The position numbers and the translations under genes are program-made. DNA of 64,000 bases, taken from positions 400,606 through 464,605 of the IMG/VR virus record IMGVR_UViG_3300023174_000033; one strand, 5' to 3'. The notes under the pieces are model-generated. The model did no database searches. It was not told the DNA's origin and saw nothing but the letters and a program-made list of their open reading frames with translations. How positions within the stretch are numbered: position 1 is the first letter of the stretch; the number at the start of each line of letters is the position of its first letter. Shown piece by piece: positions 2,715-60,992 of the stretch.

Positions 2715-2848
2715 AGAAATAAAGATAATATAATGCCCAAAGAAGTTAAAAATACAATAGATATGGCCATTATTCCAATTAGCAATGAACATCCTGTAAC
2801 CGAAATCATTAATAAGTCACCAAGTAAATTTTTCCTCCCATCATTCAT
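2711..2848 (-). CDS. Small membrane protein (45 aa)
   Basis: MNDGRKNLLGDLLMISVTGCSLLIGIMAISIVFLTSLGIIISLFL. ATG lies 4 nt after a TATATTTG promoter element. Confidence 0.6.
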   Translation of the reverse strand: MNDGRKNLLGDLLMISVTGCSLLIGIMAISIVFLTSLGIILSLFL

Positions 2849-2852
2849 AATG

Positions 2853-2860
2853 CAAATATA
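2853..2860 (-). promoter_or_regulatory. Bacteroidetes -7 promoter element (TATATTTG)
   Basis: Matches TAnnTTTG, 4 nt upstream of ATG 2848. Confidence 0.65.
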
Positions 2861-2894
2861 GTTAAAGTTTTTACTCTAAAAAATAAAATAAAAT

Positions 2895-2927
2895 AAAAAA
2901 ACCCAACCGAGCTAAAGTTGGGTTTTT
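2895..2927 (-). terminator. Intrinsic terminator
   Basis: AAAAACCCAAC-N9-GTTGGGTTTTT inverted repeat with A/T tails. Confidence 0.8.
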
Positions 2928-2929
2928 AA

Positions 2930-3236
2930 TTAAAAGTTGAGAGAGATTTAATTAAGATTGCGGTCTCAACACCATCAATCTCTAACTCCGACTTTCCCAA
3001 ATCCGCAAATTTGGTTTGTCTACACCTGGATTTGTGTGTGATGCTTTAGGTGTTTCAGCATCAGACCCTACGGGTGATAGGTTTGGTGACCCACAACATC
3101 TACTAAATGTTGCTCCTTGTTTCATCCATATTAGTAGTTATGGACTTATCTGGACTTGTGTGATCTATATTTGGTTCCTAACATAAATCAAGTTAGATCC
3201 TTTCGGTTAGTCGGCTCTCGCAGCTCCCGTTGGACA
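2930..3236 (-). ncRNA. Candidate large structured non-coding RNA (~300 nt), family not recognised
   Basis: GC-enriched intergenic block between a full promoter and a terminator. At least 7 hairpins, a long-range CCGACT/AGTCGG helix, complementary loops CTACTAA/TTAGTAG and an ACACCT/AGGTGT pseudoknot. Confidence 0.7.
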
Positions 3237-3239
3237 ATA

Positions 3240-3270
3240 CAAAGGTAAGGCGATTTTTTAGGATTCCAAA
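3240..3270 (-). promoter_or_regulatory. Complete Bacteroidetes promoter (-33 TTTG, -7 TACCTTTG)
   Basis: TTTG at 3270-3267, 19-nt spacer, TACCTTTG at 3247-3240. No good ORF follows it. Confidence 0.75.
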
Positions 3271-3575
3271 ATATTTTTCAATTTTTTTTCTCTTAAATAA
3301 TAAATTAATTTTTCCTCAGCCCATAAGAATATCTTAAGTCTTGGAATTAAGTATTCATCACTCCATCTTGTATGTTTTATATAACCTCTCAACTCCTCAA
3401 TAGTTCTTTGAACCGAATCTAAATCATGGAAAAAATTTCCAGAAGAACCATAATACAAAAAAACTACCTTAGTATCATTTTCTAGTATCTTATGTCCATA
3501 AACCTCTGGTTCATATTCATCTATTATGAAATAATCATTCTTACAAAGGTCAGTAAATATTTTAAGCTGAGACAT
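3258..3575 (-). CDS. Hypothetical protein with C-terminal R-x-x-K-L-x-x-I-L tag
   Basis: Ends LREKKLKNILES. Confidence 0.75.
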   Translation of the reverse strand: MSQLKIFTDLCKNDYFIIDEYEPEVYGHKILENDTKVVFLYYGSSGNFFHDLDSVQRTIEELRGYIKHTRWSDEYLIPRLKIFLWAEEKLIYYLREKKLKNILES

Positions 3576-3591
3576 AGTAATATATACTTAT

Positions 3592-4116
3592 GTGAAATTC
3601 ATTAAAAGTTATAAAATTTTTGAGGCAGATGGTACTTTTATGTATGACCCATCAATTGAAAGTATATTACCAGAATATATTAAGATAATTAAGGGGAATC
3701 CAAAAAACCCACTTAGATTAGCTTATAAAAAAGGTATATCAAGACACCTAGGACCAGAAGTTCAAATACCATATGAAACGATGGATAAGAATGGTGGTAG
3801 GGAAAATCCAGACACTTTAGAATTTGACATATATTGGAACTACGATACAAATACTAGTAGTTTAAATATAAATGTCGAAGTAAATTATGGTGATTTAACT
3901 GCTTGTCAATTCTCCATAGAAGCTCCTAATAAAGTTGATGTGATAGTATATACCTCATTACACTCAAAAGATGACCCATCAAATACCGTGTTTGCAATAG
4001 ACGATGAAAGTTTGCAATCATTCTGTAATTACATCAACAAATGGGATCATGGTATCCATATAAATCGCGAAGATTTGAAGTTTATGGACAAGTACGATAA
4101 TTACTTACCTACTTGA
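3592..4116 (+). CDS. Hypothetical protein with MKxIKxF(E)-type N-terminal tag
   Basis: Starts MKFIKSYKIFEA (GTG). AATATATA at 3579-3586. Confidence 0.8.
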   Translation: MKFIKSYKIFEADGTFMYDPSIESILPEYIKIIKGNPKNPLRLAYKKGISRHLGPEVQIPYETMDKNGGRENPDTLEFDIYWNYDTNTSSLNINVEVNYGDLTACQFSIEAPNKVDVIVYTSLHSKDDPSNTVFAIDDESLQSFCNYINKWDHGIHINREDLKFMDKYDNYLPT

Positions 4117-7450: not shown

Positions 7451-7477
7451 TTTTATCAAACTTTTTTTTTACCTTTG
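7446..7477 (+). promoter_or_regulatory. Complete Bacteroidetes promoter
   Basis: TTTG at 7446-7449, 20-nt spacer, TACCTTTG at 7470-7477. ATG follows 4 nt later. Confidence 0.75.
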
Positions 7478-7481
7478 TATT

Positions 7482-7979
7482 ATGTTCACACAAGATATCA
7501 CAACCGAAAAATCCAAAGTTATACTTTTGGTTGGCCCGCCTTTGAGTGGTAAGGATACTTTCTTGAAATCACAAGATATAACTGACTTTACAGTAATTAG
7601 TAGAGACGATATTCTTATGTCTTTACATGATAATTCCTCTTATTCAGAAGCTTTTGATAAAGTAGATCAAAAAGAAGTAGATAGATTATTGAATAAAAAA
7701 ATTCAAGATTCAATATCCAAGAAAGAGAATGTTATAATCAATATGACAAATCTTTCACCGAAATCAAGAAATAAGCATCTTTGCAAATTCGCAAACACTG
7801 ATTATTACAAAATTGCCATAGTCTTTCCAAAATTAGATTTGACCGATTATATAAATAGAAATGAGGGTAGGTCAATAAGTGAAAATAAGTTTATTCCTCT
7901 GCCTGTTATCAAAAATATGCTTGATAATTGGACTGATATTACAGATAGTGAAGGATTTGACACAATAATAAAACTTTAA
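7482..7979 (+). CDS. P-loop kinase, AAA_33/polynucleotide-kinase-like
   Basis: ILLVGPPLSGKDT, ISRDDI, NMTNLS...R and terminal EGFD, as in PNK kinase domains. Confidence 0.8.
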   Translation: MFTQDITTEKSKVILLVGPPLSGKDTFLKSQDITDFTVISRDDILMSLHDNSSYSEAFDKVDQKEVDRLLNKKIQDSISKKENVIINMTNLSPKSRNKHLCKFANTDYYKIAIVFPKLDLTDYINRNEGRSISENKFIPLPVIKNMLDNWTDITDSEGFDTIIKL

Positions 7980-9343: not shown

Positions 9344-9571
9344 TTAAATAACTTCCCAAAGTTCCTTTGTGTCCATATTTAATTTGGACATATCATTATT
9401 CAAAAGTTTTAAAAGGTTTTCCATTTTTGATTCAAATAAAGGATATTCTTTATCCTTTACAATTTTTGAGAATCTACCATCATGTTGGATACCATCAAAT
9501 GGAAAATGAAATTCACCTTTCAAAAAAAATATTTGTGTACAAAGCTTCTCGAATTTTTCTATTTGATTCAT
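9344..9571 (-). CDS. Hypothetical protein
   Basis: Start reassigned to MNQIEKF (9571), 4 nt after TATCTTTG at 9583-9576. Confidence 0.7.
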   Translation of the reverse strand: MNQIEKFEKLCTQIFFLKGEFHFPFDGIQHDGRFSKIVKDKEYPLFESKMENLLKLLNNDMSKLNMDTKELWEVI

Positions 9572-9575
9572 AATA

Positions 9576-9583
9576 CAAAGATA
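9576..9583 (-). promoter_or_regulatory. Bacteroidetes -7 element (TATCTTTG)
   Basis: 4 nt upstream of ATG 9571. Confidence 0.65.
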
Positions 9584-14275: not shown

Positions 14276-14303
14276 AAAAAAAATTATTACCTTTGTGAAA
14301 GAT

Positions 14304-14534
14304 ATGACAAACACGGAATTAGCAAGACACATTTACTTCTACTCAAAGAGTTGTAAATCTGAACTACCATCTGGCCAGACTTGGAGTGATCATGATGATA
14401 AACTGGCAATTAATTACATAGCGAATCTTATGGAACTGCATTTTGAACCACAAAATCATCTCGGTTCAAAAGGGTTTGAGTCCATACCTACTAGAAATAA
14501 TAATAATGAAAATTCTCCTATCTTCGGTTGTTAA
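14304..14534 (+). CDS. Hypothetical protein
   Basis: Start reassigned to MTNTELARH, 8 nt after TACCTTTG at 14288-14295. Confidence 0.6.
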   Translation: MTNTELARHIYFYSKSCKSELPSGQTWSDHDDKLAINYIANLMELHFEPQNHLGSKGFESIPTRNNNNENSPIFGC

Positions 14535-15495: not shown

Positions 15496-15503
15496 TATCT
15501 TTG
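15496..15503 (+). promoter_or_regulatory. Bacteroidetes -7 element (TATCTTTG)
   Basis: 8 nt upstream of ATG 15512. Confidence 0.6.
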
Positions 15504-15511
15504 TATTAATT

Positions 15512-15703
15512 ATGGAATTGAGCATAGATCAGAAAATCGCCATCAACAAGTTGCTTCGTAAATACGATGGCACGAACACATTTATACTATCTTTACAAAA
15601 ACAACTAAAGTCAGCAAAAGCTCTTAAAGTTGAAGTAAATGGTAAAATGGTAAAAATTCTTTCAGACAAACAATACTTAACAGCAGAAACAATACTAAAA
15701 TAA
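15512..15703 (+). CDS. Small hypothetical protein
   Basis: YDGTNTFILSL...LSDKQ, with its own promoter. Confidence 0.7.
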   Translation: MELSIDQKIAINKLLRKYDGTNTFILSLQKQLKSAKALKVEVNGKMVKILSDKQYLTAETILK

Positions 15704-20792: not shown

Positions 20793-23657
20793 TTAATAGT
20801 TGTAGAACAAAAATAAATTTATTGCTGGATTATTTACACCAGTAGCACCTATTGGACCTTGATTTCCTTGTATACCAGTTGGTCCTTGAACTCCTTGTGG
20901 TCCACCAGCAGGACCAGTAGCCCCTTGTGGCCCAATAATACCATCTATTTTAGAAATTGTAATCCTTGAGTTTGGTTCATTTTGTAACCATCCAGAACCG
21001 TTTATTGTAACAGTACCAGCTTGGTCAGAATTTAAATAAGCTCTTATATCAAAGTAATCATTTTGAGCAAGTGTTATGATGAAAGAAAACATCACAGGTT
21101 GTCCATAACTATCACTCAATAAAATACTATTTGACGAATACCTATTATTTGAGTTTGTACTTTGACCATTTTTTACACCATATACCTGTAATGATGTTGC
21201 AAAATCATTAGCACCAAAAGTGGAAATAAAACCAGAAACAGCTACTGTGATAGTAGATGTGTTTATGTTTGTAAATGAATAAGAAGCTCCACTATAAGTT
21301 ACACCCAGAGATCCAATAGTATTTGATGTATCTATGTTTGGCCAAGGTATTATCCCCTCTGTATTGGGTGATATTGATGTGGCATTTGTTTGGTCTCCAA
21401 ATCTACCTATACTTGCAAAACTTGTTCCTGCAGTTGGACCTTGAACACCTATAGCTCCTTGTGGTCCAGTATTTCCTTGTAGACCAGTTACACCTTGTGG
21501 ACCAGTTACACCTTGGACTCCTTGAAAACCTTGAGGACCTTGCAGACCTTGAAATCCTTGTGGACCAGTTGTACCAGTTCCAGCACTAACTATAAATAAT
21601 GCTAAGTTATTATTATTAGAAAAGTTATGGGTTGCACTTAATAAACTAACTTTCACCTCAACATAACCAGTTTGTATAGAAGCATCCGTAGTCACTACCC
21701 ATTTTTGATAATTATTTGAATTTCCTTGGTCCTGTAAGATTAATATATCATTAACTTTTATCAAAGCCAATATAAAATCTATATCTATATTATCATTTGT
21801 TATATGTGATATATTTAGTTGTGTTGCTGATGTCTGTGTAGCATTATCCCATAGAATATATTGACTACCAGGGTTACCACTTGTTAATGTTGTTTTGGCC
21901 TTATATAAGAAAGTATTGGTTGAACCACCAGCTGGACCTTGGTCACCTTGTGGACCTTGGTCTCCTTGAAATCCTTGTGGTCCATCAAAACCCTGAGGTC
22001 CCATATCTCCTTGTGGACCTTGGTCTCCTTGAAATCCTTGTGGTCCATCAAAACCTTGCGGACCATCAAATCCTTGCGGACCATCAAATCCTTGCGGACC
22101 ATCAAATCCTTGCGGACCATCAAATCCTTGCGGACCTGGATCACCCTGTGGACCTGGATCACCCTGTGGACCTGGATCACCCTGTGGACCTGGATCGCCC
22201 TGTGGACCTGGATCGCCCTGTGGACCTGGATCGCCCTGTGGACCTGGATCGCCCTGTGGACCTGGATCACCCTGTGGACCTGTGTTACCTTGAACACCCT
22301 GGAATCCTTGTGGACCAGTATTACCTTGAAAACCCTGAGGTCCAGTAAATCCTTGTGAACCAGTAAGTCCTTGATTCCCCTGTGGACCTTGTAAACCTTG
22401 GAATCCTTGGAATCCTTGTGGACCTGTAAATCCCTGAGGTCCTTCTATACCAATAGACAATGGTACAAAAATCATATCGTGTCCATTAGTAAATGAATAA
22501 CCACCATTAACATAAGTAACTGGTATTGAAACATAACTATTAGGTGTAATACTAGTTGTCCCACTAACTGTCCATTTTTGATAGTTATTTGAGTTATTCT
22601 CATCTTGGAGTATTAAACTATCACCAGTTTTAATCAATGCTAAAAATACATCTATATCTACACCATCTCTTGTTAAGTGAGAAACATATAATATAGTTGA
22701 GCTTATTTGCGTGGCATTATTCCACACAATCTGTGAGTTATTTGGTGGAGGTGATTGTGTATTTGTTCTAGCATTATATTTGTAATAAGATACTGATACA
22801 CCATCAGCACCAGCAGCACCAGTTCCACCTTGAATACCTTGTACACCTTGAAATCCTTGTGGGCCTGTATAACCTTGAAATCCTTGTACACCTTGAAATC
22901 CTTGTGGGCCTGTATAACCTTGAAATCCTTGTGGACCAGTAGTTCCCTGACTACCAGTTGAACCTTGATTTCCAGTAGTTCCCTGACTACCAGTTGAACC
23001 TTGAGGACCAGTATTACCTTGAGCACCAGTACCACCAAAAGCACCCCCTTGAATACCTTGAAATCCTTGAGGACCAGTATTACCTTGGTTTCCAGTACCT
23101 CCACCAAGTGGTCCCTGAGCACCAGTATTTCCCTGAGGACCAGTATTACCTTGATTACCAGTACCACCACCTAAACCACCTTGAACACCCTGTGGTCCAG
23201 TATAACCTTGAAATCCTTGTGGACCTTGGATTCCTTGTACACCAGTAAAACCTTGGGGTCCCTCTGTGCCGGCACCTGTTATGACAAGACCACTGGTGGT
23301 GGTAGCAAAAATCAGTGTATAATCATCAGTACTATTATGTGTTAAAGTATATGTTGTTATTTCTTGGAAACTACCATCCAATACTTGAACTACCGGATAA
23401 TATCCAAAACTATGTGTTATTGTTAATGTATCAGAAGAACTAAAAGTGCTATTTAAAATGGAGGGAACCCCACCAGATCCTTGTGGACCTTGTTGACCTT
23501 GTGATCCAGTCTCACCATTAGCCCCTATAACACCATTTCCCCCAGAAATTTCCAAAAGATTTCCATCACCATCATAAAATTGACCATCGATATATTGGAC
23601 CATCACTGGCAATTTTTCGAAGGTTAATTGAAATATTTTATTTGGTAAATCTGCCAA
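20793..23657 (-). CDS. Collagen-like fibre protein with two repeated globular inserts
   Basis: Long (Gly-X-Y)n blocks separated by two similar domains (WNNATQ...NNYQKW and WDNATQ...NNYQKW). TTG start, AATATATA at 23682-23675. Confidence 0.9.
21930..22290 (-). repeat. 18-nt coding tandem repeats (GPQGDP x ~8, GPQGFD x ~5)
   Basis: Units such as TGTGGACCTGGATC(A/G)CCC at ~22131-22280. Confidence 0.9.
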
Positions 23658-26569: not shown

Positions 26570-26577
26570 TATATTTG
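26570..26577 (+). promoter_or_regulatory. Bacteroidetes -7 element (TATATTTG) driving the tRNAs
   Basis: 10 nt upstream of the first tRNA. Confidence 0.6.
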
Positions 26578-26587: not shown

Positions 26588-26661
26588 AGACAGGTGGCGC
26601 AATCGGTGAGCGCAGGACTCTTATACGGTCAAGGTTGTGGGTTCAAGTCCCATCCTGTCAA
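26588..26661 (+). tRNA. tRNA-Ile(UAU)
   Basis: D arm GCGC/GCGC, anticodon loop CT-TAT-AC, T arm GTGGG-TTCAAGT-CCCAT. The 1:72 pair is an A:A mismatch. No encoded CCA. Confidence 0.8.
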
Positions 26662-26718
26662 CAAATAAAATCTGTAAACAAAGAGGGCTAATAATATAAA
26701 ATATTAAGATATATAAAA

Positions 26719-26792: not shown

Positions 26793-26825
26793 CACTTTTT
26801 TATTAAAAAAAACTAATTAACTAAC

Positions 26826-30070: not shown

Positions 30071-30390
30071 AGGTTTAATATCTCATCTATATCATCATCC
30101 CGTTTTTGTTCTTTGGATGGTAGTGCCACATCTACTAAATATACTTTGAAGTTAAGGATTTCTTCTTGGATACTACCATCTTTCATATCATAAAACTCTT
30201 TATAAACAAACTTACCTTGGTAATCATTTGGATATTTACTATTATCTGGCACAAAATCAACAAACTCACCCCTTTGTCTTGGTACACCGCAATAATCATC
30301 AAGATATTCTCTGATGTATTTGAGGGTTGGACCAACACAGATTGGTGTACCATCTTGTAATACCACATGGGAAAATTTTACTACTTTCAT
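30067..30390 (-). CDS. Hypothetical protein with C-terminal tag
   Basis: Ends KRDDDIDEILNL. ATG 4 nt after TATCTTTG at 30402-30395. Confidence 0.75.
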   Translation of the reverse strand: MKVVKFSHVVLQDGTPICVGPTLKYIREYLDDYCGVPRQRGEFVDFVPDNSKYPNDYQGKFVYKEFYDMKDGSIQEEILNFKVYLVDVALPSKEQKRDDDIDEILNL

Positions 30391-30391
30391 T

Positions 30392-30667
30392 TTACAAAGA
30401 TAATATATTTTCTATTTTTTCCTCTCTAATTTCTTCAATTGTTTTGAACTCTGAAATAGGGTAGTAGTATTTGGTTGTTCCCTTATCAGATTTTTCAATC
30501 AAATAATATCTTTTATCATCGTTTATTTTGGATGAAATATGACTACCAAACCAAACATAAGGATTTGTGTAAGGAGCCAAGGTATCTTCTCTTGGTAAGG
30601 CATTATACACTTTACCATCAGTTAATTCATCCCACTCAACATCAGTTTTGATTTTAATAACTTTCAT
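30392..30667 (-). CDS. Small VCI-family protein with C-terminal tag
   Basis: LTDGKVY...FKTIEEIREEKIENIL. Confidence 0.8.
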   Translation of the reverse strand: MKVIKIKTDVEWDELTDGKVYNALPREDTLAPYTNPYVWFGSHISSKINDDKRYYLIEKSDKGTTKYYYPISEFKTIEEIREEKIENILSL

Positions 30668-33720: not shown

Positions 33721-34043
33721 AGGATTTCTTCTATTTTTTTATTCCTAACTTCTTGGATGTTTTCACTATCAACCCATTTATTAAAATCTTCAACTGCGTT
33801 TTCTGAAGCATGTTGGTGGTAATACTCTTGATGTTTCACAAGTGATGGGTCAAGAGTTCCACCTTTCCCATCTGAATATGGAATAGGAACTGGACTTACT
33901 TTATCTTGGATAAGACCAGGATAATGTTTTGTATATCCACAAGGTTTGCAAATAAAACGAATGCATCTATCATAAGAATCGTCTTTGATTTTTCCACCAC
34001 ATTTTGGGCAAGGTTTTAAGTATTGTTCGCTATAACTTCCCAT
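33717..34043 (-). CDS. Zn-ribbon protein (Lar-like CPKCGG...CKPC) with C-terminal tag
   Basis: LKPCPKCGG, CKPCG. Ends VRNKKIEEIL. ATG 4 nt after TATTTTTG at 34055-34048. Confidence 0.8.
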   Translation of the reverse strand: MGSYSEQYLKPCPKCGGKIKDDSYDRCIRFICKPCGYTKHYPGLIQDKVSPVPIPYSDGKGGTLDPSLVKHQEYYHQHASENAVEDFNKWVDSENIQEVRNKKIEEIL

Positions 34044-34047
34044 ACCA

Positions 34048-34062
34048 CAAAAATAATATATA
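34048..34062. promoter_or_regulatory. Back-to-back promoters: TATTTTTG (minus) and AATATATA (plus)
   Basis: The motifs occupy 34055-34048 and 34055-34062 in a 23-nt divergent gap. Confidence 0.6.
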
Positions 34063-34066
34063 ATCT

Positions 34067-34438
34067 ATGAAATACCTAAAAATATTTGAAAGTTTTAATC
34101 AAGGGAAATATTATTGGCCAATAACTGCAACTGAGTTCAATAAGTATGTAGAAACATTTGAATTTACAGAACAAGAAATTGAAGCAATAAAAAGTATCTG
34201 TGATAAAAGATTTACTGAAATGGATTTTGAATTTTATACAAGCTGGGATATACCACCAACTGGTTCAATAAATTTGGAGACAAATACAGGTGGTCAAAAC
34301 TTATATACTATAAGAACAAGAATAGACAAAGAAAATGACGAATATTTCGCAGTCGCATATAATATTGATAGGACACCAGAATATTACAAAGCAGACCAAT
34401 TGGAGGGTCTAATAAAACTTTTGGAAGATATCTTATGA
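34067..34438 (+). CDS. MKYLK-tag, YxCD-family protein
   Basis: MKYLKIFESF...EYFAV...YYKADQLEGLIKLL. Confidence 0.85.
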   Translation: MKYLKIFESFNQGKYYWPITATEFNKYVETFEFTEQEIEAIKSICDKRFTEMDFEFYTSWDIPPTGSINLETNTGGQNLYTIRTRIDKENDEYFAVAYNIDRTPEYYKADQLEGLIKLLEDIL

Positions 34439-36368: not shown

Positions 36369-36371
36369 TTT

Positions 36372-36710: not shown

Positions 36711-36907
36711 TTTACTATTTCTTCTATTTTATCATTTCTATTATCTTCAATGGATTCGAATATTTCTTTTGGATACCAACCACCTTGATTTAGATCATCT
36801 TTGTAAACCCAATGTCCATCATCTCTACTGGTAGAAGGCACCAATCTATAGTATTTTCCTTCAGTCAAATATCTTATACTTTTGATACATTTGAGTTTTA
36901 TATCCAT
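36707..36907 (-). CDS. Small VCI-family protein with C-terminal tag
   Basis: Start MDIKLKCIK (36907), 4 nt after TATATTTG at 36919-36912. Ends NRNDKIEEIVK. Confidence 0.8.
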   Translation of the reverse strand: MDIKLKCIKSIRYLTEGKYYRLVPSTSRDDGHWVYKDDLNQGGWYPKEIFESIEDNRNDKIEEIVK

Positions 36908-36977
36908 GTTACAAATATAGAAAATAATATTTAAAAAGTAAAAAATTATATATACAAATATAAATATTAATTGGCAA

Positions 36978-41083: not shown

Positions 41084-41117
41084 AAAATTTTTATAGTTTT
41101 TTCTTTTATATATCATG

Positions 41118-43089: not shown

Positions 43090-43215
43090 AAAATTTTATA
43101 GTTTGTTTATTTTATCCGAAAAATTAGATAAGTTTTTTTCCAAACAACAATTCATTTTTTCCCAAAAAAGTACAATTTTCGGAATTTTTGGATTTTTTAT
43201 GGAAATATATAATAT

Positions 43216-43593
43216 ATGGAGGAAAGGAATAAAATAATGATAGTTGACGAGTCGGAAACTATTTCATTAATCACTAGCAAACTATTTGAATTTCAACACT
43301 GGAATGTAACAAAAGCAATCAGTGGTGAAATGGCTCTAGAATTTATACAAAATGAAGATTTTGATGTGATTCTTATGGATATAAATCTACCAGGAATGAC
43401 TGGAATAGAGTGTTGTCATCTAATAAGAAAAATGGAAGATAAAAGAAAATCTAAAACCCCCATCTTTGCGGTTACTGGAAATGATTTAAATTTAACAGAA
43501 AAGGAATATAAAGATAGGGGATTTAGTGAATTTTTTGAAAAACCAACTAACTTTCAACTACTAATAGATAAACTTAAAAAGATTCTGGACTAA
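43216..43593 (+). CDS. Stand-alone response-regulator receiver domain
   Basis: IMIVDE, DVILMDINLPGMTG, AVTG, EKP: all receiver landmarks. AATATATA at 43204-43211. Confidence 0.9.
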   Translation: MEERNKIMIVDESETISLITSKLFEFQHWNVTKAISGEMALEFIQNEDFDVILMDINLPGMTGIECCHLIRKMEDKRKSKTPIFAVTGNDLNLTEKEYKDRGFSEFFEKPTNFQLLIDKLKKILD

Positions 43594-47369: not shown

Positions 47370-48110
47370 ATGGACCCGTTTAGTGAGTCATTTGGTTTTG
47401 GTGAATATAAATCACAAGCAATAGATTTATTAAAAACTACCATCGAAATTTTAAATGAATTCGAAATACCAAACATGCTAATATCCGGCACTTTACTTGG
47501 ATATATCAGACACAATGATTTTATACCTTGGGATGATGACATAGACTTACTTGTTGATTCTTCAATCCTAAGAAAACTAGGTAAGATTGCTGAAAAATAT
47601 GATAACATTAATATTTTTTACAAAAATAAATATGATGCTATTAAATTCTGTTTTGATTTTGGAAAACCCATAAGTGATAAATCTTGGGAAATGTCAATAA
47701 TAGATGGTAAAATTCAAAGAAAATCAAAACTTAATTTTCCATTTGTAGATTTATTTATCTATGAATCTGGTTACGGGACTCATATTTGTGGACAAGAACA
47801 ACATATCGAAATTGATGGTGAAATTAGAAAAATGTTTATGCCCTTTTCTGGTCCTTGTGATAGGTGTTTTAGATTCATAAAATCGGATGAATTAGTTTTT
47901 TTTCACAACGATTGGAAGAAAAAGAACTTTTTCCCTCTACAAGAAGTAGATTTTTTAGGAATAAAATGTAATATACCTAAAAATCCCCACCATTTTTTAA
48001 AAAAAAATTACGATGGGGATTATATGAAAGTAATTGAGTCAAGAAACTACGACCATAAAAACAACTTAAAAGTAGAAAATATAACTAAAAAACCTTATGT
48101 TAGAAATTGA
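47370..48110 (+). CDS. licD: LicD-family (fukutin-like) phosphotransferase
   Basis: ISGTLLGYIRHNDFIPWDDDIDL, VDLF, NIPKNP..FL...Y. Confidence 0.85.
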   Translation: MDPFSESFGFGEYKSQAIDLLKTTIEILNEFEIPNMLISGTLLGYIRHNDFIPWDDDIDLLVDSSILRKLGKIAEKYDNINIFYKNKYDAIKFCFDFGKPISDKSWEMSIIDGKIQRKSKLNFPFVDLFIYESGYGTHICGQEQHIEIDGEIRKMFMPFSGPCDRCFRFIKSDELVFFHNDWKKKNFFPLQEVDFLGIKCNIPKNPHHFLKKNYDGDYMKVIESRNYDHKNNLKVENITKKPYVRN

Positions 48111-49869
48111 AGAATTAAAAACACATTTGCCGACTGGTGTAGATGCAAAGATTATGCAGTATGAGGAAAATGCTACAAACATCTCCGATGATAAAATTGA
48201 TTTTCCTAAATTATTGGATGGCACACAAACTACCATACTCATAAATATGGAAAGACATACTGAGAGATATCATGTAAGTTTGGAACAATTAAAAAAACTA
48301 TCAATACAAAATTTTGTACACCTTAAAGGAACTGATGGTAAAATTAAATCTCAGTTGGAACAGGATCTAACTTACATCTTGGGGTTTATCAAACAATTCA
48401 ATGATAAGGTAGTTAGTAATCAAATAGAAATAAATGATTTCTCAGAAGTAAATAATCAAGGTGTAAATCTACAAGATGGACCACTTGGCTGTTATTGTTC
48501 ACATCTTAGAGCAATGATTTATGGTTACTTATCTGGTAGTGATTACACTATAATTTGTGAAGATGATATTTCTATTACAAACACAAAAAATATTGAGGAG
48601 TATATACCAAAAATTCCAAATGATTGGGATGTTATTTTCTTGAACTCAAGACCCAAAAATGTTTTACATGACGAACCTTATTATAAATTCATTGATGAAT
48701 TCCATTCTGGTCACTTTTATATTATCAAAAACAAAGCTCTACCTACCATATTTAGTGGTATGTACCCGATGAACGACCAAGTAGATGTTCTACTTTCTTT
48801 CTTACACAAGAAATTGAATATGTATAACATACCAGATACTGTTTATCAAAAGAACTTAGAAACCAATACCCAAAACAATCTTGATATTATTTTTAGTTCA
48901 CCTAACTATATTCCAGTAACAGATGCTTTAAACAAATCAGAAGAAATATTAAATCACTATGCTAATAAAATTCTTCCTGATAACACAGACCAAAATAGAT
49001 TGATTGTAAAGCATTTGATGTATGATATGATTTACAATTTTATACTAACTAAAGGCATTAATAACGAACCAGATCCCAACATAGAAGACTATGTTTTTGA
49101 TAATCCCCATATTGGAAAATGGAGATATACTAAGTTGGAAAAATTTGTTGGATTTTTCTTACAATGTACGAAAAAAGGAATTAACCCAAAGTTAGCTGGT
49201 CAAGGTTTAACAAATGCACTGTTATTTACTTTAAATAAGTTCACTGAATTACATGATACTGATGGAGATATTAAAGCTTATGGATTTGGATCGACTGCTC
49301 ATACCTACAAAGTTGGTAATGATTTGTTAATCAAAAGATATAATAAAAAATTGAGGTGGGCTACTGAAGGTCATGATGACCCCAAAAAAATTATGAATAA
49401 GGAAATAGAACTTTTGGAAAAATTAAAAAATGTAAAATCGGTTCCGAAAATAGTTGACTATGACAATAGAGATATCATTATGGAATATAGGGGGGAATCT
49501 ATCTATAATGATTTTAACTTACCTACTGATTGGAAGGATCAAATAACAAATATATTTTCTGAACTTACTAATAATGGTGTATTTTATCCAGAGTTTAGGT
49601 TGCAGAATATCCTTGTATTAGATGGTAAGATTAGTTTTGTTGATTTTGGTATGGCTGAGTTTAGGGATAAATGTGATAACGCTATCAATCTCGAAAAGTT
49701 TATTAAGTATTTGAGTTTACTTGAGGATAAGTTTAAGATTGTAATTGATTTAGATGCTAGACAAAGGTTGATTTCAACTTTTCTAAAAAATGTTAATATG
49801 CCAACGCCGACCATAGACCAGAAGTTTTCGGAAGGTATTGAACCATTGTTTGGTAATGACTTTTTTTAG
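48097..49869 (+). CDS. GT25 glycosyltransferase fused to a C-terminal kinase-like domain
   Basis: LINMERHTER, GCYCSH, ICEDD. Then GFGSTAH, LIKRY, IIMEYRG, YPEFRLQN, FVDFG. Confidence 0.8.
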   Translation: MLEIEELKTHLPTGVDAKIMQYEENATNISDDKIDFPKLLDGTQTTILINMERHTERYHVSLEQLKKLSIQNFVHLKGTDGKIKSQLEQDLTYILGFIKQFNDKVVSNQIEINDFSEVNNQGVNLQDGPLGCYCSHLRAMIYGYLSGSDYTIICEDDISITNTKNIEEYIPKIPNDWDVIFLNSRPKNVLHDEPYYKFIDEFHSGHFYIIKNKALPTIFSGMYPMNDQVDVLLSFLHKKLNMYNIPDTVYQKNLETNTQNNLDIIFSSPNYIPVTDALNKSEEILNHYANKILPDNTDQNRLIVKHLMYDMIYNFILTKGINNEPDPNIEDYVFDNPHIGKWRYTKLEKFVGFFLQCTKKGINPKLAGQGLTNALLFTLNKFTELHDTDGDIKAYGFGSTAHTYKVGNDLLIKRYNKKLRWATEGHDDPKKIMNKEIELLEKLKNVKSVPKIVDYDNRDIIMEYRGESIYNDFNLPTDWKDQITNIFSELTNNGVFYPEFRLQNILVLDGKISFVDFGMAEFRDKCDNAINLEKFIKYLSLLEDKFKIVIDLDARQRLISTFLKNVNMPTPTIDQKFSEGIEPLFGNDFF

Positions 49870-51040: not shown

Positions 51041-51528
51041 TAAAATTTATATAGTTTTACTGACCAATCCTTCCAATCATTTTTAGAAGTCAATTGGGCT
51101 CTATCGTATTTATCCCACTTTTTCAAGTCAATATCCAACCAATCAGTAATTTCTCTATTTGCTTTATCAAGATTCAAATTCCGATTGAATGCTTTAGCAA
51201 AACAATAAGTAATATAACCTTTAGCTCTGTGCTCATAATCTTTTGCATCAAAGCCAAGTTTTTTAGCTTTATTGATTACAGTGATTTCACAATCATATTC
51301 ATATTCATATACTTTCATACCTTTATGAACCTCTGCCCGAGCAATGTGGGTTATTTCGTGAAGGCAAATAAGGAATCTATTTAGAGTTGTTGGATCGGGT
51401 ATTTCTACGAGTTTTTCTTTAATGAAAGCAACTCCACAATCACCCTTTCTCCATTTCCTAACTTGGATACCATAGAAACGAAGTTCATCATCAACGTATT
51501 TTTTTGCCCACTCTGAATTGAATTCCAT
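51040..51528 (-). CDS. HExxH zinc-metallopeptidase-like protein
   Basis: CLHEITH...YEYE. Start MEFNS (51528), 4 nt after TATCTTTG at 51540-51533. Confidence 0.7.
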   Translation of the reverse strand: MEFNSEWAKKYVDDELRFYGIQVRKWRKGDCGVAFIKEKLVEIPDPTTLNRFLICLHEITHIARAEVHKGMKVYEYEYDCEITVINKAKKLGFDAKDYEHRAKGYITYCFAKAFNRNLNLDKANREITDWLDIDLKKWDKYDRAQLTSKNDWKDWSVKLYKF

Positions 51529-51591
51529 AACACAAAGATACAACTTTTTTTTGATTTGTCAATACAATAAGAACAAAAAAAAATTAGTTAT

Positions 51592-52273: not shown

Positions 52274-52413
52274 TATGAAAGCTCATCGGAGTTATTTTTC
52301 CTTGAGTAAATCTTTTTGGAGGGCACTACCTTTGAAGTGAACCTGGCATCAAATCCAGTATCTCTCTTAATCAAATCCCTTTTTATTTTCTTATAGTTTA
52401 TTTTAGATTTCAT
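52270..52413 (-). CDS. Basic 47-aa peptide (ArfA-like motif candidate)
   Basis: MKSKINYKKIKRDLIKRDTGFDARFTSKVVPSKKIYSRKNNSDELSY. ATG 4 nt after TACTTTTG at 52425-52418. Confidence 0.6.
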   Translation of the reverse strand: MKSKINYKKIKRDLIKRDTGFDARFTSKVVPSKKIYSRKNNSDELSY

Positions 52414-52430
52414 ATTACAAAAGTAATATT

Positions 52431-54810: not shown

Positions 54811-56574
54811 ATGAAATTACTCGATGGAAAAAAGGCTTCTAAAATAATACTTTCTGAATTAAAATATAAAATAAAAAAAATTACTGAAAGAAATAATGAA
54901 ATAAAAATACCAAAAATTGCGATAGTTCTGGTCGGTGATAATCCTAGCAGTATGTCTTATATGAGGTCAAAACTAAAGATATCATCGGAAAATAATTTCA
55001 ATGCTCAATTGTTTTTTTATTCTGACTTTATAAAAGAAGATGAATTGCTAAACGAAATTGATAAGTTAAACAATTCATCAGATATTGATGGGGTCATAGT
55101 TGAACTACCCCTACCAAATCAAATATCCCAAGAAAAAATAATTAACCGAATTGATCCACAAAAAGATATTGATGGCTTCAATCCGATTAACTTTGGCAAA
55201 ATGTCTCTTGGCCAAAAAGCACACAGACCCGCTACAGCTTATGGTATTCTAAAACTTCTGGAATTTTACAAAATTTATACAACGAGCAAACACATTGTTG
55301 TTATTGGAAGATCAAATATAGTTGGAAAACCTATATCTATAATGTTAGGAAATGACTTTGATATTGGTAGAGCGACAGTAACTTCATGTGATATAAACAC
55401 ACCAATTGAACTATTAAGAGAAGAATCAAGAAGAGCTGATATTATAATCGTAGCAGTTGGTAAAGTAAATCTTTTAAAAGAAGATATGGTAAAGGATGGT
55501 GCCATAGTTATTGACGTTGGCATAAATATGGTTGGTGATACAATCGTAGGAGATTGTGATTTTGAAAACGTATCTCCGAAATGTGAATGGATCACACCTG
55601 TTCCAGGTGGTGTTGGCCCAATGACAATTTGTGCACTTCTTTTGAACACATTTGCAACTTGGTATGAAAAAAATAAAATACTTGAAGAAAAGATAAATTC
55701 AATTGACTACACAGTTAAACTGATTGAGAGTCTAGACCAAAGTTTCTCACCCACCACGGATGGAAAAAAACTAATCGGAACCTACGATCATAATAGAATT
55801 CCAGGTGATAATGAAGTAATTCATGTCATAGGTGATTATCCAGTCGGAAAGCATTCACTAATAACAGAAAATCCAAGTTTCAGACATTATAAATGGGCAA
55901 TGAAGTTCAGCTATGATTCATTTGAGGGTAATACCTGTTGGGATGGAATTGATGATATTTGGATCATCAACGATACCGTTAGACAAGATAGACTTTATGA
56001 TACCCTGAAAGAATTCAAGAAAATTGGGATACCGCTCAATAAAGTAAAAATACAACCAGCCGAATTCAATAGTTCAACCGGTAATAATTACGCAAATAAA
56101 CTAATTGGATGTTTCAAATCACACCTTAAAATATTTGAACAATATCAAGATAAAGATTTTAAACATTTATTAATTTTTGAAGATGATTTTACTTTTTCCG
56201 ATCCGATTGAAGAGTCACAAAGACAAATTAGAGAATTTGTCTCAAGAGACTATGAATATGATGTGATGTTATTCTCAACAAGTTGTATCGGTCAAATAAT
56301 TCCAATTGATGATTTGATAAGTGAATCAAAACAACCTTGTACAACAACTGCTGGTTATATGGTCTCAAAGAAGGGACTTGAAAAAATTATACCACTTTGG
56401 CACGAAGGAATAAACGGTCTACTTGGATGGTGTGATTTCAATCAATTTGCTTGTGATAAATATTGGACAAAAATTCAGAAAGATGGACAAATGTTTTCTT
56501 TTAACGCAAAAATTGGATACCAAAGACCAAGCTATAGTACAACTCTTGGCAATTTGAGTTACAATTTAGATTAA
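54811..56574 (+). CDS. folD: FolD (methylene-THF dehydrogenase/cyclohydrolase) fused to a GT25 domain
   Basis: LLDGK, KDIDGF, VIGRSNIVGKP, IDVGIN, TPVPGGVGPMT in the first ~290 aa. IGCFKSH, IFEDD, TTAGYMVS, QRPSYS after. One uninterrupted frame. Confidence 0.85.
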   Translation: MKLLDGKKASKIILSELKYKIKKITERNNEIKIPKIAIVLVGDNPSSMSYMRSKLKISSENNFNAQLFFYSDFIKEDELLNEIDKLNNSSDIDGVIVELPLPNQISQEKIINRIDPQKDIDGFNPINFGKMSLGQKAHRPATAYGILKLLEFYKIYTTSKHIVVIGRSNIVGKPISIMLGNDFDIGRATVTSCDINTPIELLREESRRADIIIVAVGKVNLLKEDMVKDGAIVIDVGINMVGDTIVGDCDFENVSPKCEWITPVPGGVGPMTICALLLNTFATWYEKNKILEEKINSIDYTVKLIESLDQSFSPTTDGKKLIGTYDHNRIPGDNEVIHVIGDYPVGKHSLITENPSFRHYKWAMKFSYDSFEGNTCWDGIDDIWIINDTVRQDRLYDTLKEFKKIGIPLNKVKIQPAEFNSSTGNNYANKLIGCFKSHLKIFEQYQDKDFKHLLIFEDDFTFSDPIEESQRQIREFVSRDYEYDVMLFSTSCIGQIIPIDDLISESKQPCTTTAGYMVSKKGLEKIIPLWHEGINGLLGWCDFNQFACDKYWTKIQKDGQMFSFNAKIGYQRPSYSTTLGNLSYNLD

Positions 56575-58367: not shown

Positions 58368-59096
58368 ATGGCAAAGAAATTTGAAATATCAGATACCATT
58401 GACCTCTATTTCAAAGAAATTGAGAAGGTATCATCACCTCTTACTAAAAAAGAGGAACACGCACTTGCTGTAAAAATACAAGCAGGTGATACAAATGCTT
58501 TGAACGAATTGGTTTTACACAACCTAAAATTCGTTGTATTACTCGCAAACAAATTTATTGGAATGGGTGTTAATATTGATGATTTAATCCAAGAAGGTAA
58601 TGCTGGTTTGATTGAAGCCGCTAAAAGATTCACATCCGATAAAGACACAAGATTTATAACATATGCTCAATTTTGGATAAGAAAATATCTTAATGAATCA
58701 ATTGTGGAATATGGCAGAACAGTAAAACTACCACACAATAAAGAGTATGATATTTATAAACAAAAAGTTGCTGGAGAATGGGAGGGAAATTTACACAATG
58801 TGGAATTGGACAAAACCATGGGTGATGAAAATGAAGATACTTTAGGCGACCACATATTATCTGAAGAATTTTCAGATCCATTTCAAAACGAAGAACAAAA
58901 TAATCAACTAATTTTTTTCTTAAACAAATTAACACCCGAGGAGATAAAAATAACAAAACTATTTTATGGAATTGAACAAACTTCATCATTATCAACAAGA
59001 GAGGTTGGAAATATAGTTGGAATAGAAGAGTCAAAGGTTAATAGAATTCTAAAAATTGCAAGAAGCAAAATGAGAAAAGCAATTACAAAAAAATGA
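58368..59096 (+). CDS. RNA polymerase sigma-70-family factor (regions 1.2, 2 and 4)
   Basis: IDLYFKEI...LT.KEE..LA, ELVLHNLKFVV, DDLIQEG..GL.EAA.RF, RFITYA.FWIR, C-terminal HTH. Confidence 0.9.
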   Translation: MAKKFEISDTIDLYFKEIEKVSSPLTKKEEHALAVKIQAGDTNALNELVLHNLKFVVLLANKFIGMGVNIDDLIQEGNAGLIEAAKRFTSDKDTRFITYAQFWIRKYLNESIVEYGRTVKLPHNKEYDIYKQKVAGEWEGNLHNVELDKTMGDENEDTLGDHILSEEFSDPFQNEEQNNQLIFFLNKLTPEEIKITKLFYGIEQTSSLSTREVGNIVGIEESKVNRILKIARSKMRKAITKK

Positions 59097-59329
59097 AAAA
59101 ACACCATCAAGTTTTACTTGAACTCTTACAATTGAGAGATAAAGACTACGACTTATTTGTAGATAAGTTATATGATGCTATAACAAATGAATTCTCAAAA
59201 TATTTCAAAGAAGAGTTAATTAAAGATAAAGACCATCAACAGACATTAAAGATTATGATTGATCATTACGAAAAAAAGGAAGAATACGAAAAGTGTGATG
59301 TGTTACTACATTTGTTGAAAATCGGTTAA
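59093..59329 (+). CDS. Small helical protein (UVR-like C-terminus)
   Basis: MIDHYEKKEEYEKCDVL. Confidence 0.7.
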   Translation: MKKHHQVLLELLQLRDKDYDLFVDKLYDAITNEFSKYFKEELIKDKDHQQTLKIMIDHYEKKEEYEKCDVLLHLLKIG

Positions 59330-59339
59330 TCTAATAGTT

Positions 59340-59783
59340 ATGAGAATAATCATCATTATATTATTTTCACTATTTCCAATTAATGCTTTTGGTCAATATT
59401 TACAAACTCTAAATACATCAAGTGAAAAAGATGATTATTCTGAATTTGAAATTAAAATATTGATGCAAATCAATTTCAAAAGAACCTTAAATAAATTAAG
59501 ACCGCTAAAAACCAATCCCACATTAAATAATTTTTCAAAATTAATCTGCAATAGATTACAAGAAAAAAATATTGACACCTCAATAAAAAATACTCTAATT
59601 ATTTATTATAGTGATTCACTAAAATTAGACCACCCAATGCTGAAAGATACTTTTCATTTAATAGGCATTCATAAAGTTCCTCATAAATTTAATTGTGAAG
59701 TTTTGGTAATAACTTTGGACAAAAAAATGGAGCAAATCAAATGGAAGGATTTAGATTGTCCTAAATTTATGAGTAAAAAATAA
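59340..59783 (+). CDS. Secreted protein, possibly degenerate CAP/SCP domain
   Basis: Signal peptide NAFG|QY. INFKRT..KL.PL...TL. Confidence 0.6.
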   Translation: MRIIIIILFSLFPINAFGQYLQTLNTSSEKDDYSEFEIKILMQINFKRTLNKLRPLKTNPTLNNFSKLICNRLQEKNIDTSIKNTLIIYYSDSLKLDHPMLKDTFHLIGIHKVPHKFNCEVLVITLDKKMEQIKWKDLDCPKFMSKK

Positions 59784-59817
59784 TTCATCGGACAGTATTA
59801 ATATATACTGTTTTGTC

Positions 59818-60258
59818 ATGGAACAATTAGTCTCTTATTTTACCATATTTATATTGTGGATAGTATATTCATCACTTTTTGGATATTGTGATGCCTACTA
59901 TTGGTATAGTGCTAATGTTGGCAAATACTGTTTAAAGGACTTTAAATTCAAAGATTTGCATCCACAATATTTTTGGATGCGATCTATAGTTGGGTCTGTG
60001 TTTGCTTACTCAATGTCAGATGGGACAGTAATTAACTGGTTACTTACAACTATTTGTTTGGGTATGATATTACCTTTTTTTCATAATGGATTTTATTATA
60101 AAACAAGAAACAAAATTGACCAAACAGTTTATCCACACGGATTTAGAGATATGTCTAAAACAAGTATAGCCAATGTTAATTTCACATTTCTTGGCAGGAC
60201 TTTATTACTTATTTTGGGAGTTATTGGAACGTCTATTCTCTTCACTTTAAAAAAGTGA
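59818..60258 (+). CDS. Multi-pass membrane protein
   Basis: Four hydrophobic segments, FFHNGFYY. AATATATA at 59800-59807. Confidence 0.75.
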   Translation: MEQLVSYFTIFILWIVYSSLFGYCDAYYWYSANVGKYCLKDFKFKDLHPQYFWMRSIVGSVFAYSMSDGTVINWLLTTICLGMILPFFHNGFYYKTRNKIDQTVYPHGFRDMSKTSIANVNFTFLGRTLLLILGVIGTSILFTLKK

Positions 60259-60300
60259 AAAAATTTTGTGTTCTTAATAAAAATTAATATATTTGTATTA

Positions 60301-60420
60301 ATGTTCAAAGTAATAATTTTTCTCGGTCTACTTTATATAGCTTGGAAATTGGCTAGAAAAATTTTCAATGTTTTATTTTTTATATTCATAATCTATTTAA
60401 TTTTAAATTTACTTTCATGA
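60301..60420 (+). CDS. Small membrane peptide (39 aa)
   Basis: ATG 5 nt after TATATTTG at 60288-60295. ATGA overlap with the next gene. Confidence 0.55.
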   Translation: MFKVIIFLGLLYIAWKLARKIFNVLFFIFIIYLILNLLS

Positions 60421-60707
60421 AAAAACTAATTCCATTCCTAACCTTATTTTTGAGTTCGTGTTATTATTACACGCAACCGTCTCCAAGACCAGTATATACC
60501 TATGGTACATACTACCAAAGTCCACCACAAAGAAATTGTCAGTGTGGTTATGTCCTTGATAAGGGAGTAGACGATTGGGGATATTATTTCCTTGATGTGC
60601 AAAACCAATGCTCTGGAAATGTAAAAAGATTCACTTTCAGTAAAAGTGATTGGATGCAATATAAAATTTCCGATGGAATATGTCTTGAAAGAAATTCCTC
60701 TTGGTAA
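60417..60707 (+). CDS. Small Cys-rich lipoprotein
   Basis: MKKLIPFLTLFLSS|C, CQCG...NQCSGN...ICL. Confidence 0.75.
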   Translation: MKKLIPFLTLFLSSCYYYTQPSPRPVYTYGTYYQSPPQRNCQCGYVLDKGVDDWGYYFLDVQNQCSGNVKRFTFSKSDWMQYKISDGICLERNSSW

Positions 60708-60725
60708 TAAAAATATAAAAAACTA

Positions 60726-60757
60726 TTTGGAATCTGAGTAATATATTACTACCTTTG
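60726..60757 (+). promoter_or_regulatory. Complete Bacteroidetes promoter
   Basis: TTTG at 60726-60729, 20-nt spacer, TACCTTTG at 60750-60757. ATG follows 4 nt later. Confidence 0.75.
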
Positions 60758-60761
60758 TATT

Positions 60762-60992
60762 ATGAAAACGAAACAACAATCGGCTTACTTTATAACCAAG
60801 AGAGTATTCTCAAGAAATTCGTTTGGCCCTATACCACAAGAGAAAATCTTCTACTTCACCCACTATCGTAGAGAGTTTCAAACCCTTTCAAAGAAACAAC
60901 AGGACCGTTTTGTTAAGGATCTGAAAAAGTTCTTTGGAGGAGACTACTTTATGGTAGAGCACTGGGAAAGAAAATTAAATATAAAGCTCTAA
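60762..60992 (+). CDS. Small basic hypothetical protein
   Basis: Has its own promoter. Confidence 0.7.
   Translation: MKTKQQSAYFITKRVFSRNSFGPIPQEKIFYFTHYRREFQTLSKKQQDRFVKDLKKFFGGDYFMVEHWERKLNIKL

What the first reader, a model, noticed from the sequence alone, without database searches (positions are those of the whole stretch)
2848..60764. Host-type promoters sit exactly 4 nt from the start codon: a probable leaderless early transcriptome
Seen: TAnnTTTG is followed by exactly 4 nt and then ATG at nine genes (starts 2848, 7482, 9571, 30390, 34043, 36907, 51528, 52413, 60762), by 5 nt at 60301 and by 8 nt at 14304 and 15512. Established: this element is centred near -7 in Bacteroidetes promoters. 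Inference: transcription starts at or within a few nt of the ATG, so these mRNAs are leaderless or nearly so. That could let the phage translate when canonical initiation is impaired. It also corrects several start calls in the ORF track (MYLC... starts are the promoter itself).
Basis: partly seen in the sequence, partly recalled or inferred. Interest (0 to 1): 0.6.

Follow-up and report, generated by a model that had tools for sequence, protein, structure and literature searches.

The report
Start-codon-abutting promoters in a huge phage
In this 465-kb freshwater phage of Bacteroidota, and in its relatives, promoters sit 4-5 bases before the ATG of about a hundred genes, so many messages probably have no leader, which is rare in the hosts; transcript starts were not mapped.

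Summary
TAnnTTTG-N4-ATG occurs 11 times in the window against 2.2 expected. All nine listed sites and the three 5- and 8-nt sites are present.

The window is the last 64 kb of a 464,605-bp virus record from lake metagenomes, with several marks of a Bacteroidota host. Most of the 22 genome-wide d=4 sites carry the full host promoter, TTTG-N20-TAyCTTTG-tatt-ATG. Published mapping puts the G at -5, so the A of ATG is +1.

Against control motifs, the host-type box is tied to gene starts only at spacings of 3-9 nt. Bacteroidota DNA has a small 4-nt peak too, but spacings of 14-40 nt dominate there.

A second, phage-specific motif, ATATATA, lies upstream of about 60% of gene starts that follow an intergenic gap. 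Its spacing is bimodal, at 4-5 nt and at 16-30 nt. Related huge phages show both patterns.

The phage has two sigma factors, no detected RNA polymerase core, and its own IF3 and bS21.

No transcript 5' ends could be mapped, so "leaderless" and "early" remain inferences.

The parts
2846..2860 (-). Host-type -7 box, 4-nt spacer and ATG (2848). Opens a 45-aa hydrophobic ORF. An intrinsic-terminator-like hairpin lies just upstream.
7470..7484 (+). Host-type -7 box, 4 nt and ATG (7482). Opens a 165-aa AAA_33 / polynucleotide-kinase-like gene. A terminator-like hairpin overlaps the -33 region.
9569..9583 (-). Host-type -7 box, 4 nt and ATG (9571). Opens a 75-aa ORF. The ORF track's TTG start (MYLC) lies in the promoter.
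30388..30402 (-). -7 box, 4 nt and ATG (9 nt after the box start; ATG at 30390). It sits inside the 3' end of the upstream gene and has no -33 box. Ambiguous: an internal promoter or chance.
34041..34055 (-). -7 box, 4 nt and ATG (34043). Heads an array of about 17 small co-directional genes. It lies back-to-back with an ATATATA-type site serving 34067(+).
   Evidence: RNA-library contigs lie at 31638-33915, none at 34001-34800.
34056..34069 (+). Phage-specific ATATATA motif, 4 nt and ATG (34067). Divergent partner of the 34043 promoter.
36905..36919 (-). -7 box, 4 nt and ATG (36907), 66-aa ORF. A second TATATTTG box lies about 35 nt upstream. The ORF track's start at 37033 lies upstream of the promoter.
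51526..51540 (-). -7 box, 4 nt and ATG (51528), 162-aa protein with an HExxH motif. The TTG (MYLC) start call is corrected.
52411..52425 (-). -7 box, 4 nt and ATG (52413), with a well-placed -33 TTTGG. Opens a 47-aa basic ORF.
60750..60764 (+). -7 box, 4 nt and ATG (60762), with a consensus -33 box 20 nt upstream. Opens a 76-aa ORF.
60288..60303 (+). -7 box, 5 nt and ATG (60301). Opens a 39-aa hydrophobic ORF.
14288..14306 (+). -7 box, 8 nt and ATG (14304). Implies a leader of about 4 nt.
15496..15514 (+). -7 box, 8 nt and ATG (15512). Implies a leader of about 4 nt.
26570..26577 (+). The same -7 box about 10 nt upstream of tRNA-Ile (26588-26662). This shows that the motif acts at the transcription level and is not a translation signal.
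43205..43218 (+). ATATATA motif, 4 nt and ATG (43216). An example of the second leaderless class.
58368..59096 (+). Phage sigma factor. Regions 1.2-2.4 are 41-47% identical to Bacteroidota sigma-A. Regions 3-4 are diverged (17-25%). Candidate reader of the ATATATA motif.

Best explanation
The sites are strong Bacteroidota sigma-A promoters (-33 TTTG, about 20 bp, -7 TAyCTTTG) placed so that the normal start point, 4-5 nt after the G, is the A of the start codon. Host RNA polymerase would then make mRNAs that begin with AUG, or with 1-4 extra bases in the 5-9 nt cases. The ribosome would load these directly on the 5'-terminal AUG.

In this phage nearly every host-type promoter tied to a gene start is built this way, about 35-40 sites. 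A second, phage-specific promoter class, tAATATATA with no upstream box, has the same geometry for about 40% of its genes and a 12-25 nt A-rich leader for the rest. It is probably read by the phage's sigma-A-derived sigma factor on host core polymerase.

Leaderless expression therefore looks like a genome-wide strategy of this phage clade, about 100 genes per genome, and not only an early one.

Shown here: the motifs, their spacing, the enrichment, recurrence of both spacing patterns in relatives, and the contrast with host genomes. Inferred: the TSS position, leaderless translation, the timing, and which sigma reads which motif.
For: Enrichment and promoter anatomy:
- Window enrichment is 11 against 2.2 expected.
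- The genome-wide spacing peak is at 4 nt.
- The two-box consensus is tTtgG-N20-TATcTTTGTAtT-ATG. Two-box hits number 108, against 39 in reversed sequence.
- The same box precedes a tRNA gene.

Geometry and start codon:
- Published work places the box at -12 to -5, with 4-5 nt to the TSS (PMC6847099, PMC9723704).
- Starts at d=4 are ATG 20, GTG 1, TTG 0.

Control motifs:
- The host-type box gives 43 starts at d3-9, against about 6 expected at the control-motif rates. There is no excess at d10-60.
- ATATATA gives 75 at d3-9 and 99 at d16-30, against about 10 each.
- In leadered ATATATA sites, A reaches 72-80% at 5-6 nt after the motif. The leaderless sites place the A of ATG at the same position.

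Host comparison:
- The share at d3-9 is 44% in the phage, 19% in 41 Bacteroidota loci and 6% in a Bacteroidales chromosome (p=5e-5 and 3e-9).
- Published short-leader shares are 3.7% (5' UTR under 10 nt), 5.5% (leaderless) and at most 13% (leader of 10 nt or less) (PMC7366714, PMC9723704, PMC6847099).

Relatives:
- A second near-complete genome, G006 (terminase 64-65% identical), has 35 hits against 10 in the control, with 16 at d=4. Its ATATATA class has 36 at d=4 and 20 at d=5.
- In 80 terminase-region loci, ATATATA gives 150 at d=4 and 120 at d=5.

Transcription machinery: there are no Pfam RNAP beta or beta' hits, and there are two sigma factors.
Against: No transcript 5' end was observed. 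The only RNA run is held as short contigs from a related strain, and it may contain DNA.

Some window sites open very short or weakly coding ORFs (2848, 52413, 60762, 60301). Site 30390 lacks a -33 box.

The orthologue of the 7482 gene in two relatives has no such promoter. The arrangement is therefore not conserved gene by gene.

Genes inside operons could also be translated from read-through transcripts.

Gene calls came from a home-made ORF and hexamer caller. Divergent phiKZ-like RNA polymerases could escape the Pfam models.
Confidence: 0.7

Rival explanations
1. The host-type boxes are read by the phage's own sigma-A-like sigma factor, or by it as well as the host sigma. They would then not mark an early, host-only class.
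For: The phage sigma (58368-59096) is 41-47% identical to Bacteroidota sigma-A across regions 1.2-2.4, the part that reads the -7 box. Both motif classes share the same distance to the ATG.
Against: Its region 4 is diverged (17-25%), yet the host-type sites keep a strong -33 TTTG. That fits the host sigma better. The box-less ATATATA class fits the phage sigma.

The gene for the other phage sigma, the ECF-like one, lies downstream of a host-type box. That is what a cascade would predict.
Confidence: 0.15
2. The boxes are real promoters, but the abutting ORFs are mainly translated from longer read-through or upstream transcripts. The 4-nt spacing would then reflect genome compaction and not leaderless translation.
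For: Several sites lie at the 3' end of a co-directional upstream gene (9571, 30390, 52413). The phage packs genes with overlapping stop and start codons.
Against: Compaction alone predicts a spread of short spacings. It does not predict a sharp 4-5 nt mode with ATG-only starts.

Many sites are unit heads that follow terminators or sit in divergent gaps (2848, 7482, 34043, 36907, 51528, 60762).
Confidence: 0.1
3. The motif is a translation-initiation or RNA-processing signal next to the start codon. It would not be a promoter.
For: Bacteroidota lack Shine-Dalgarno use, and sequence just upstream of the ATG tunes initiation there (PMC6847099).
Against: The motif has a fixed-distance -33 partner. 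It matches the experimentally defined host promoter. It also precedes a tRNA gene. Host genomes place it mostly 14-40 nt upstream of starts.
Confidence: 0.04

Closest known systems
Bacteroidota primary-sigma (sigma-ABfr) promoters, -33 TTTG / -7 TAnnTTTG
   Same: Same two boxes, the same 19-21 bp gap, and the same expected 4-5 nt to the start site. A minority of host genes use the identical box-N4-ATG layout. One case is folD in Chitinophagaceae and Sphingobacteriales.
   Different: In hosts the typical leader is about 23-32 nt, and only about 4-13% of leaders are short. In this phage the short class is essentially the only detectable class for this box.
Leaderless mRNAs such as lambda cI from PRM and the mycobacterial and actinobacterial leaderless genes (own knowledge; Shell 2015 as cited in PMC6847099)
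   Same: The promoter is positioned so that +1 is the A of AUG. AUG is strongly preferred. There is no ribosome-binding leader.
   Different: The setting here is a virus of a phylum where leaderless genes are rare. The scale is about 100 genes per genome, spread over two promoter classes.
T4-type late promoters (TATAAATA read by gp55, no -35 box; own knowledge)
   Same: The ATATATA class is a single AT-rich box with no upstream element. It is found before most phage genes, including the terminase gene, in a phage that carries its own sigma factors and no detected polymerase core.
   Different: The box sequence differs. The sigma is sigma-A-derived and not gp55-like. About 40% of the sites abut the ATG.
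Jumbo phages with mapped transcriptomes (phiKZ, AR9)
   Same: Very large genomes with phage-specific AT-rich promoters.
   Different: phiKZ showed no leaderless transcript (PMC8244752). AR9 5' UTRs are 26-491 nt (PMC5312081). Both phages use their own multisubunit polymerases.

Membership tests
Bacteroidota sigma-A promoter | -7 box TAnnTTTG (no G at the two n positions) | tested here: met
   All nine window sites, and 22 genome-wide d=4 sites with consensus TATcTTTG.
Bacteroidota sigma-A promoter | -33 TTTG about 19-21 bp upstream of the -7 box | tested here: met
   15 two-box hits at d=4. Two-box hits number 108, against 39 in reversed sequence. The consensus is tTtgG. Weak or absent at 30390 and 34043.
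Bacteroidota sigma-A promoter | Transcription starts 4-5 nt after the G | not testable with these tools
   The only RNA data are contigs. The geometry is taken from PMC6847099 and PMC9723704.
Bacteroidota sigma-A promoter | Lies upstream of transcription units, including RNA genes | tested here: met
   Sites follow terminators or sit in divergent gaps. One box lies 10 nt before tRNA-Ile.
Leaderless mRNA | The 5' end lies at, or within a few nt of, the start codon | not testable with these tools
   Inferred from the box-to-ATG spacing only.
Leaderless mRNA | AUG start codon strongly preferred | tested here: met
   Host-type class at d=4: ATG 20, GTG 1, TTG 0. ATATATA class at d=4-5: ATG 45, GTG 2, TTG 0.
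Leaderless mRNA | The ORF behind the ATG is a real, translated gene | tested here: inconclusive
   Good coding scores for 7482, 30390, 36907 and 51528. Weak or negative scores for 2848, 52413, 60762 and 60301. Only 7482 has a clear family match.
Early gene class | Expressed before phage-encoded transcription factors act | not testable with these tools
   Indirect only. The promoters are host-type. The products are small ORFans, a DNA methyltransferase, a nuclease and phosphoesterases. The ECF-like sigma gene lies behind a host-type box. The terminase gene lies behind ATATATA.

The most novel reading that the evidence does not exclude
A clade of huge freshwater Bacteroidota phages expresses about 100 genes per genome as leaderless mRNAs from two promoter classes that share one -7 geometry. 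The phages carry their own IF3 and bS21 to retune start-site selection by host ribosomes for, or in time against, these messages.
Probability: 0.2. Interest if true: 0.8.

Novelty: new variant of a known kind. Interest (0 to 1): 0.6.

Why it matters
Leaderless messages are a small minority in Bacteroidota, and none was found in the two jumbo phages with mapped transcriptomes. A phage clade that builds most host-type promoters, and about 40% of its own, directly onto the ATG would be a natural system for two questions. One is how SD-independent Bacteroidota ribosomes handle 5'-terminal AUGs. The other is what phage-encoded IF3 and bS21 do.

There is also a practical gain. The two motifs give a rule for correcting start codons and finding small genes in these uncultured genomes. 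They also offer compact strong promoter-start cassettes for Bacteroidota engineering.

Tried and rejected
- Megablast of 12 kb of the window against the GenBank phage collection gave no match.
- A search for relatives with the 7482 protein in viral contigs found nothing. The terminase worked instead.
- RNA evidence: one metatranscriptome run (X20) holds parts of the region as contigs. They lie downstream of the 34043 and 36907 promoters and are absent from most of 34001-36400. Contigs cannot show 5' ends, and the library may hold DNA, so this is only compatible with the model.
- Gene-by-gene conservation: orthologues of the 7482 gene in G006 and G007 are fused to, or translationally coupled with, the upstream gene and have no box. 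The 51528 protein has no detectable orthologue there.
- Own polymerase: Pfam RNAP beta and beta' domains gave no hit. This does not exclude very divergent enzymes.
- A box at 3240-3247(-) with a 114-nt untranslated stretch was tested as a possible small RNA. There was no Rfam match, and the fold z-score was -1.2, so it was dropped.
- Composition artefact was rejected. Shuffles, reversed-pattern controls and four control motifs all stay near background.
Full report
**What the window is**

It is the last 64 kb (400606-464605) of a single 464,605-bp IMG/VR virus record. The record is 32% GC, 98% complete by CheckV, and reads well under the standard code. Near-identical DNA occurs in lake and freshwater metagenomes from several studies.

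Several features point to a Bacteroidota host:
- A phage protein carries a type-9-secretion C-terminal sorting domain.
- The phage folD is closest to Bacteroidota genes, at 59% to Psychroflexus and 48-51% to Chitinophagaceae and Sphingobacteriales.
- One phage sigma factor best matches the Bacteroidetes ECF model TIGR02985.

**The observation**

TANNTTTGNNNNATG occurs 11 times in the window, against 2.17 +/- 1.58 in shuffles, and none of 100 shuffles reaches 11. The nine listed sites are all there, and so are the 5-nt (60301) and 8-nt (14304, 15512) cases. The other two matches are out of frame or antisense.

Over the whole genome, the number of ATGs that open an ORF of at least 50 codons peaks sharply 4 nt after the box (23 sites) and at 5 nt (11). 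Other spacings give mostly 0-7. The ORF track's TTG 'MYLC' starts at 9586 and 51543 do lie in or directly before the box.

**Are they promoters?**

Aligned, the 22 d=4 sites give tTtgG-N20-TATcTTTGTAtT-ATG, which is the two-box Bacteroidota sigma-A promoter. Two-box hits number 108, against 39 in reversed sequence.

The same box sits about 10 nt before tRNA-Ile. That rules out a purely translational signal. Most window sites follow a terminator-like hairpin or lie in a divergent gap.

Site 30390 is the weak one. It has no -33 box and is buried in the upstream gene.

**Where would transcription start?**

Two transcriptome studies of flavobacteria place the box at -12 to -5, with 4-5 nt between the G and the start site (PMC6847099, PMC9723704). 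With a 4-nt spacer, the A of ATG is +1. The 5-9 nt cases would give leaders of 0-5 nt.

Consistent with leaderless translation, the codon at this spacing is ATG 20 times, GTG once and TTG never. This step is inference, because no 5' ends were seen. The single RNA run is held as contigs. They lie in the operons downstream of the 34043 and 36907 promoters and are absent from most of 34001-36400, but they cannot show starts.

**Is it ordinary for the host?**

Partly. In 41 Bacteroidota loci and in 400 kb of a Bacteroidales chromosome there is a small 4-nt peak. It includes folD itself in four Chitinophagaceae or Sphingobacteriales genomes. Five whole Bacteroidota genomes show 13-55 more hits than the reversed control per 3-5 Mb.

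Host spacings of 14-40 nt dominate, however. The share at 3-9 nt is 6% and 19%, against 44% in the phage (Fisher p=3e-9 and 5e-5). The 19% figure is inflated by orthologous repeats. Published shares of short leaders are 3.7%, 5.5% and at most 13%.

With control motifs, the phage's host-type box shows 43 starts at 3-9 nt against about 6 expected, and no excess at 10-60 nt. In this phage nearly every host-type promoter tied to a gene start abuts the ATG. A few leadered ones exist, at 5351 and 29817, before the tRNAs, and before the ECF-like sigma gene.

**A second promoter class**

ATATATA occurs in 150 of 254 upstream regions, against 5.5 expected. Extended, it reads tAATATATA, and it has no upstream box.

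Its spacing to the ATG is bimodal:

| Spacing | Sites | Control motifs |
|---|---|---|
| 3-5 nt | 47 | about 6 each |
| 3-9 nt | 75 | about 8-12 each |
| 16-30 nt | 99 | about 6-12 each |

In the leadered sites, A reaches 72-80% at 5-6 nt after the motif. That is where the leaderless sites place the A of ATG. The motif has no tie to gene starts in host DNA, so it is phage-specific.

It precedes the terminase gene throughout the clade, and also the phage's bS21 gene. In the window it forms a back-to-back pair with the host-type promoter at 34043/34067.

**Relatives**

The terminase finds about 120 related viral contigs, at 59-83% identity.
- In 80 terminase-region loci, ATATATA shows 150 sites at 4 nt and 120 at 5 nt, with a second mode at 17-28 nt.
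- G006, a 476-kb relative, has 35 host-type d=4 pattern hits against 10 in the control, with the same TATATTTGTAnTATG look. In its first 400 kb, 16 gene starts lie at d=4, and ATATATA gives 36 at 4 nt and 20 at 5 nt.

The strategy is therefore clade-wide. Individual promoters turn over, since the 7482 orthologues lack one.

**Machinery**

No RNAP beta or beta' domain was found. There are two sigma factors.

The one in the window is 41-47% identical to host sigma-A in regions 1.2-2.4 but diverged in regions 3-4. That fits a box-less, -7-type promoter such as ATATATA.

The likely scheme has three steps. Host sigma-A reads the two-box promoters first. Their products are small ORFans, a polynucleotide-kinase-like protein, a DNA methyltransferase, a nuclease and phosphoesterases. 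Phage sigma then redirects core polymerase to ATATATA. The timing is inferred and was not observed.

The phage also encodes full-length IF3 and bS21. From my own knowledge, both act on start-site selection, and IF3 disfavours leaderless starts in E. coli.

**Comparison and verdict**

Leaderless mRNAs and Bacteroidota promoters are both known, and the host uses the same layout for a few genes. What is new is the scale: about 100 genes per genome, over two promoter classes, in a virus of a phylum where this is rare. phiKZ showed no leaderless transcript, and AR9 has 26-491 nt UTRs (PMC8244752, PMC5312081). No paper in the searchable library links leaderless messages to Bacteroidota phages.

I rate it a new variant of a known kind, with moderately high interest, pending 5'-end mapping.

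Noticed in passing
genome-wide; in the window e.g. 34056-34062(+), 43205-43211(+), and ATGs at 10417(-), 13293(-), 19000(-), 24562(+): A phage-specific ATATATA (tAATATATA) motif precedes about 60% of gene starts that have an upstream gap. Its spacing to the ATG is bimodal, at 4-5 nt and at 16-30 nt. It is shared by related huge phages and has no tie to gene starts in host DNA. It is probably the middle or late promoter.
   Followed up: yes
outside the window: G000 133249-133443(+) and 386322-386852(-); loci L184, L185: The phage encodes ribosomal protein bS21 (64 aa, behind a leadered ATATATA site) and a full-length translation initiation factor IF3 (176 aa, ATG start). Both act on start-site selection, which is suggestive next to about 100 predicted leaderless genes.
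   Followed up: partly
window 58368-59096(+); second sigma at G000 161041-161646(+), locus L001: Two phage sigma factors. The window one is sigma-A-like in regions 1.2-2.4 (41-47% to Bacteroidota rpoD) with diverged regions 3-4. The other is ECF-like and lies about 105 nt downstream of a host-type box.
   Followed up: partly
window 26588-26662 and 26719-26793(+): tRNA-Ile(TAT) and tRNA-Met, driven by a host-type box at 26570-26577.
   Followed up: partly
window 29497-34043(-): About 17 co-directional 67-129-aa genes of unknown function, with overlapping stop and start codons, form one array behind the 34043 promoter. RNA-library contigs from another lake cover 31638-33915.
   Followed up: partly
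window 20793-23657(-), 62163-63998(-), and both ends of the 465-kb record: Large collagen-triple-helix repeat proteins. The record begins and ends inside such a repeat, so the assembly probably broke there and the molecule has no true end at that point.
   Followed up: no
window 54811-56574(+), 48097-49869(+), 39491-41116(-): A FolD (methylene-THF dehydrogenase/cyclohydrolase) fused to a family-25 glycosyltransferase, a second GT25 protein, and a discoidin-domain protein with a T9SS C-terminal sorting signal.
   Followed up: no
loci L005, L006, L008, L012 at about 10001 (1701 in L012): Host folD in Chitinophagaceae and Sphingobacteriales genomes starts exactly 4 nt after a TAnnTTTG box. It is a conserved leaderless-type host gene, whereas the phage's own folD lies behind an ATATAT-containing upstream region.
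   Followed up: partly
window 3240-3247(-) with 3126-3235(-): A consensus host-type box is followed by 114 nt without an ORF, before a 47-aa ORF. There is no Rfam match and no unusual fold (z = -1.2).
   Followed up: yes
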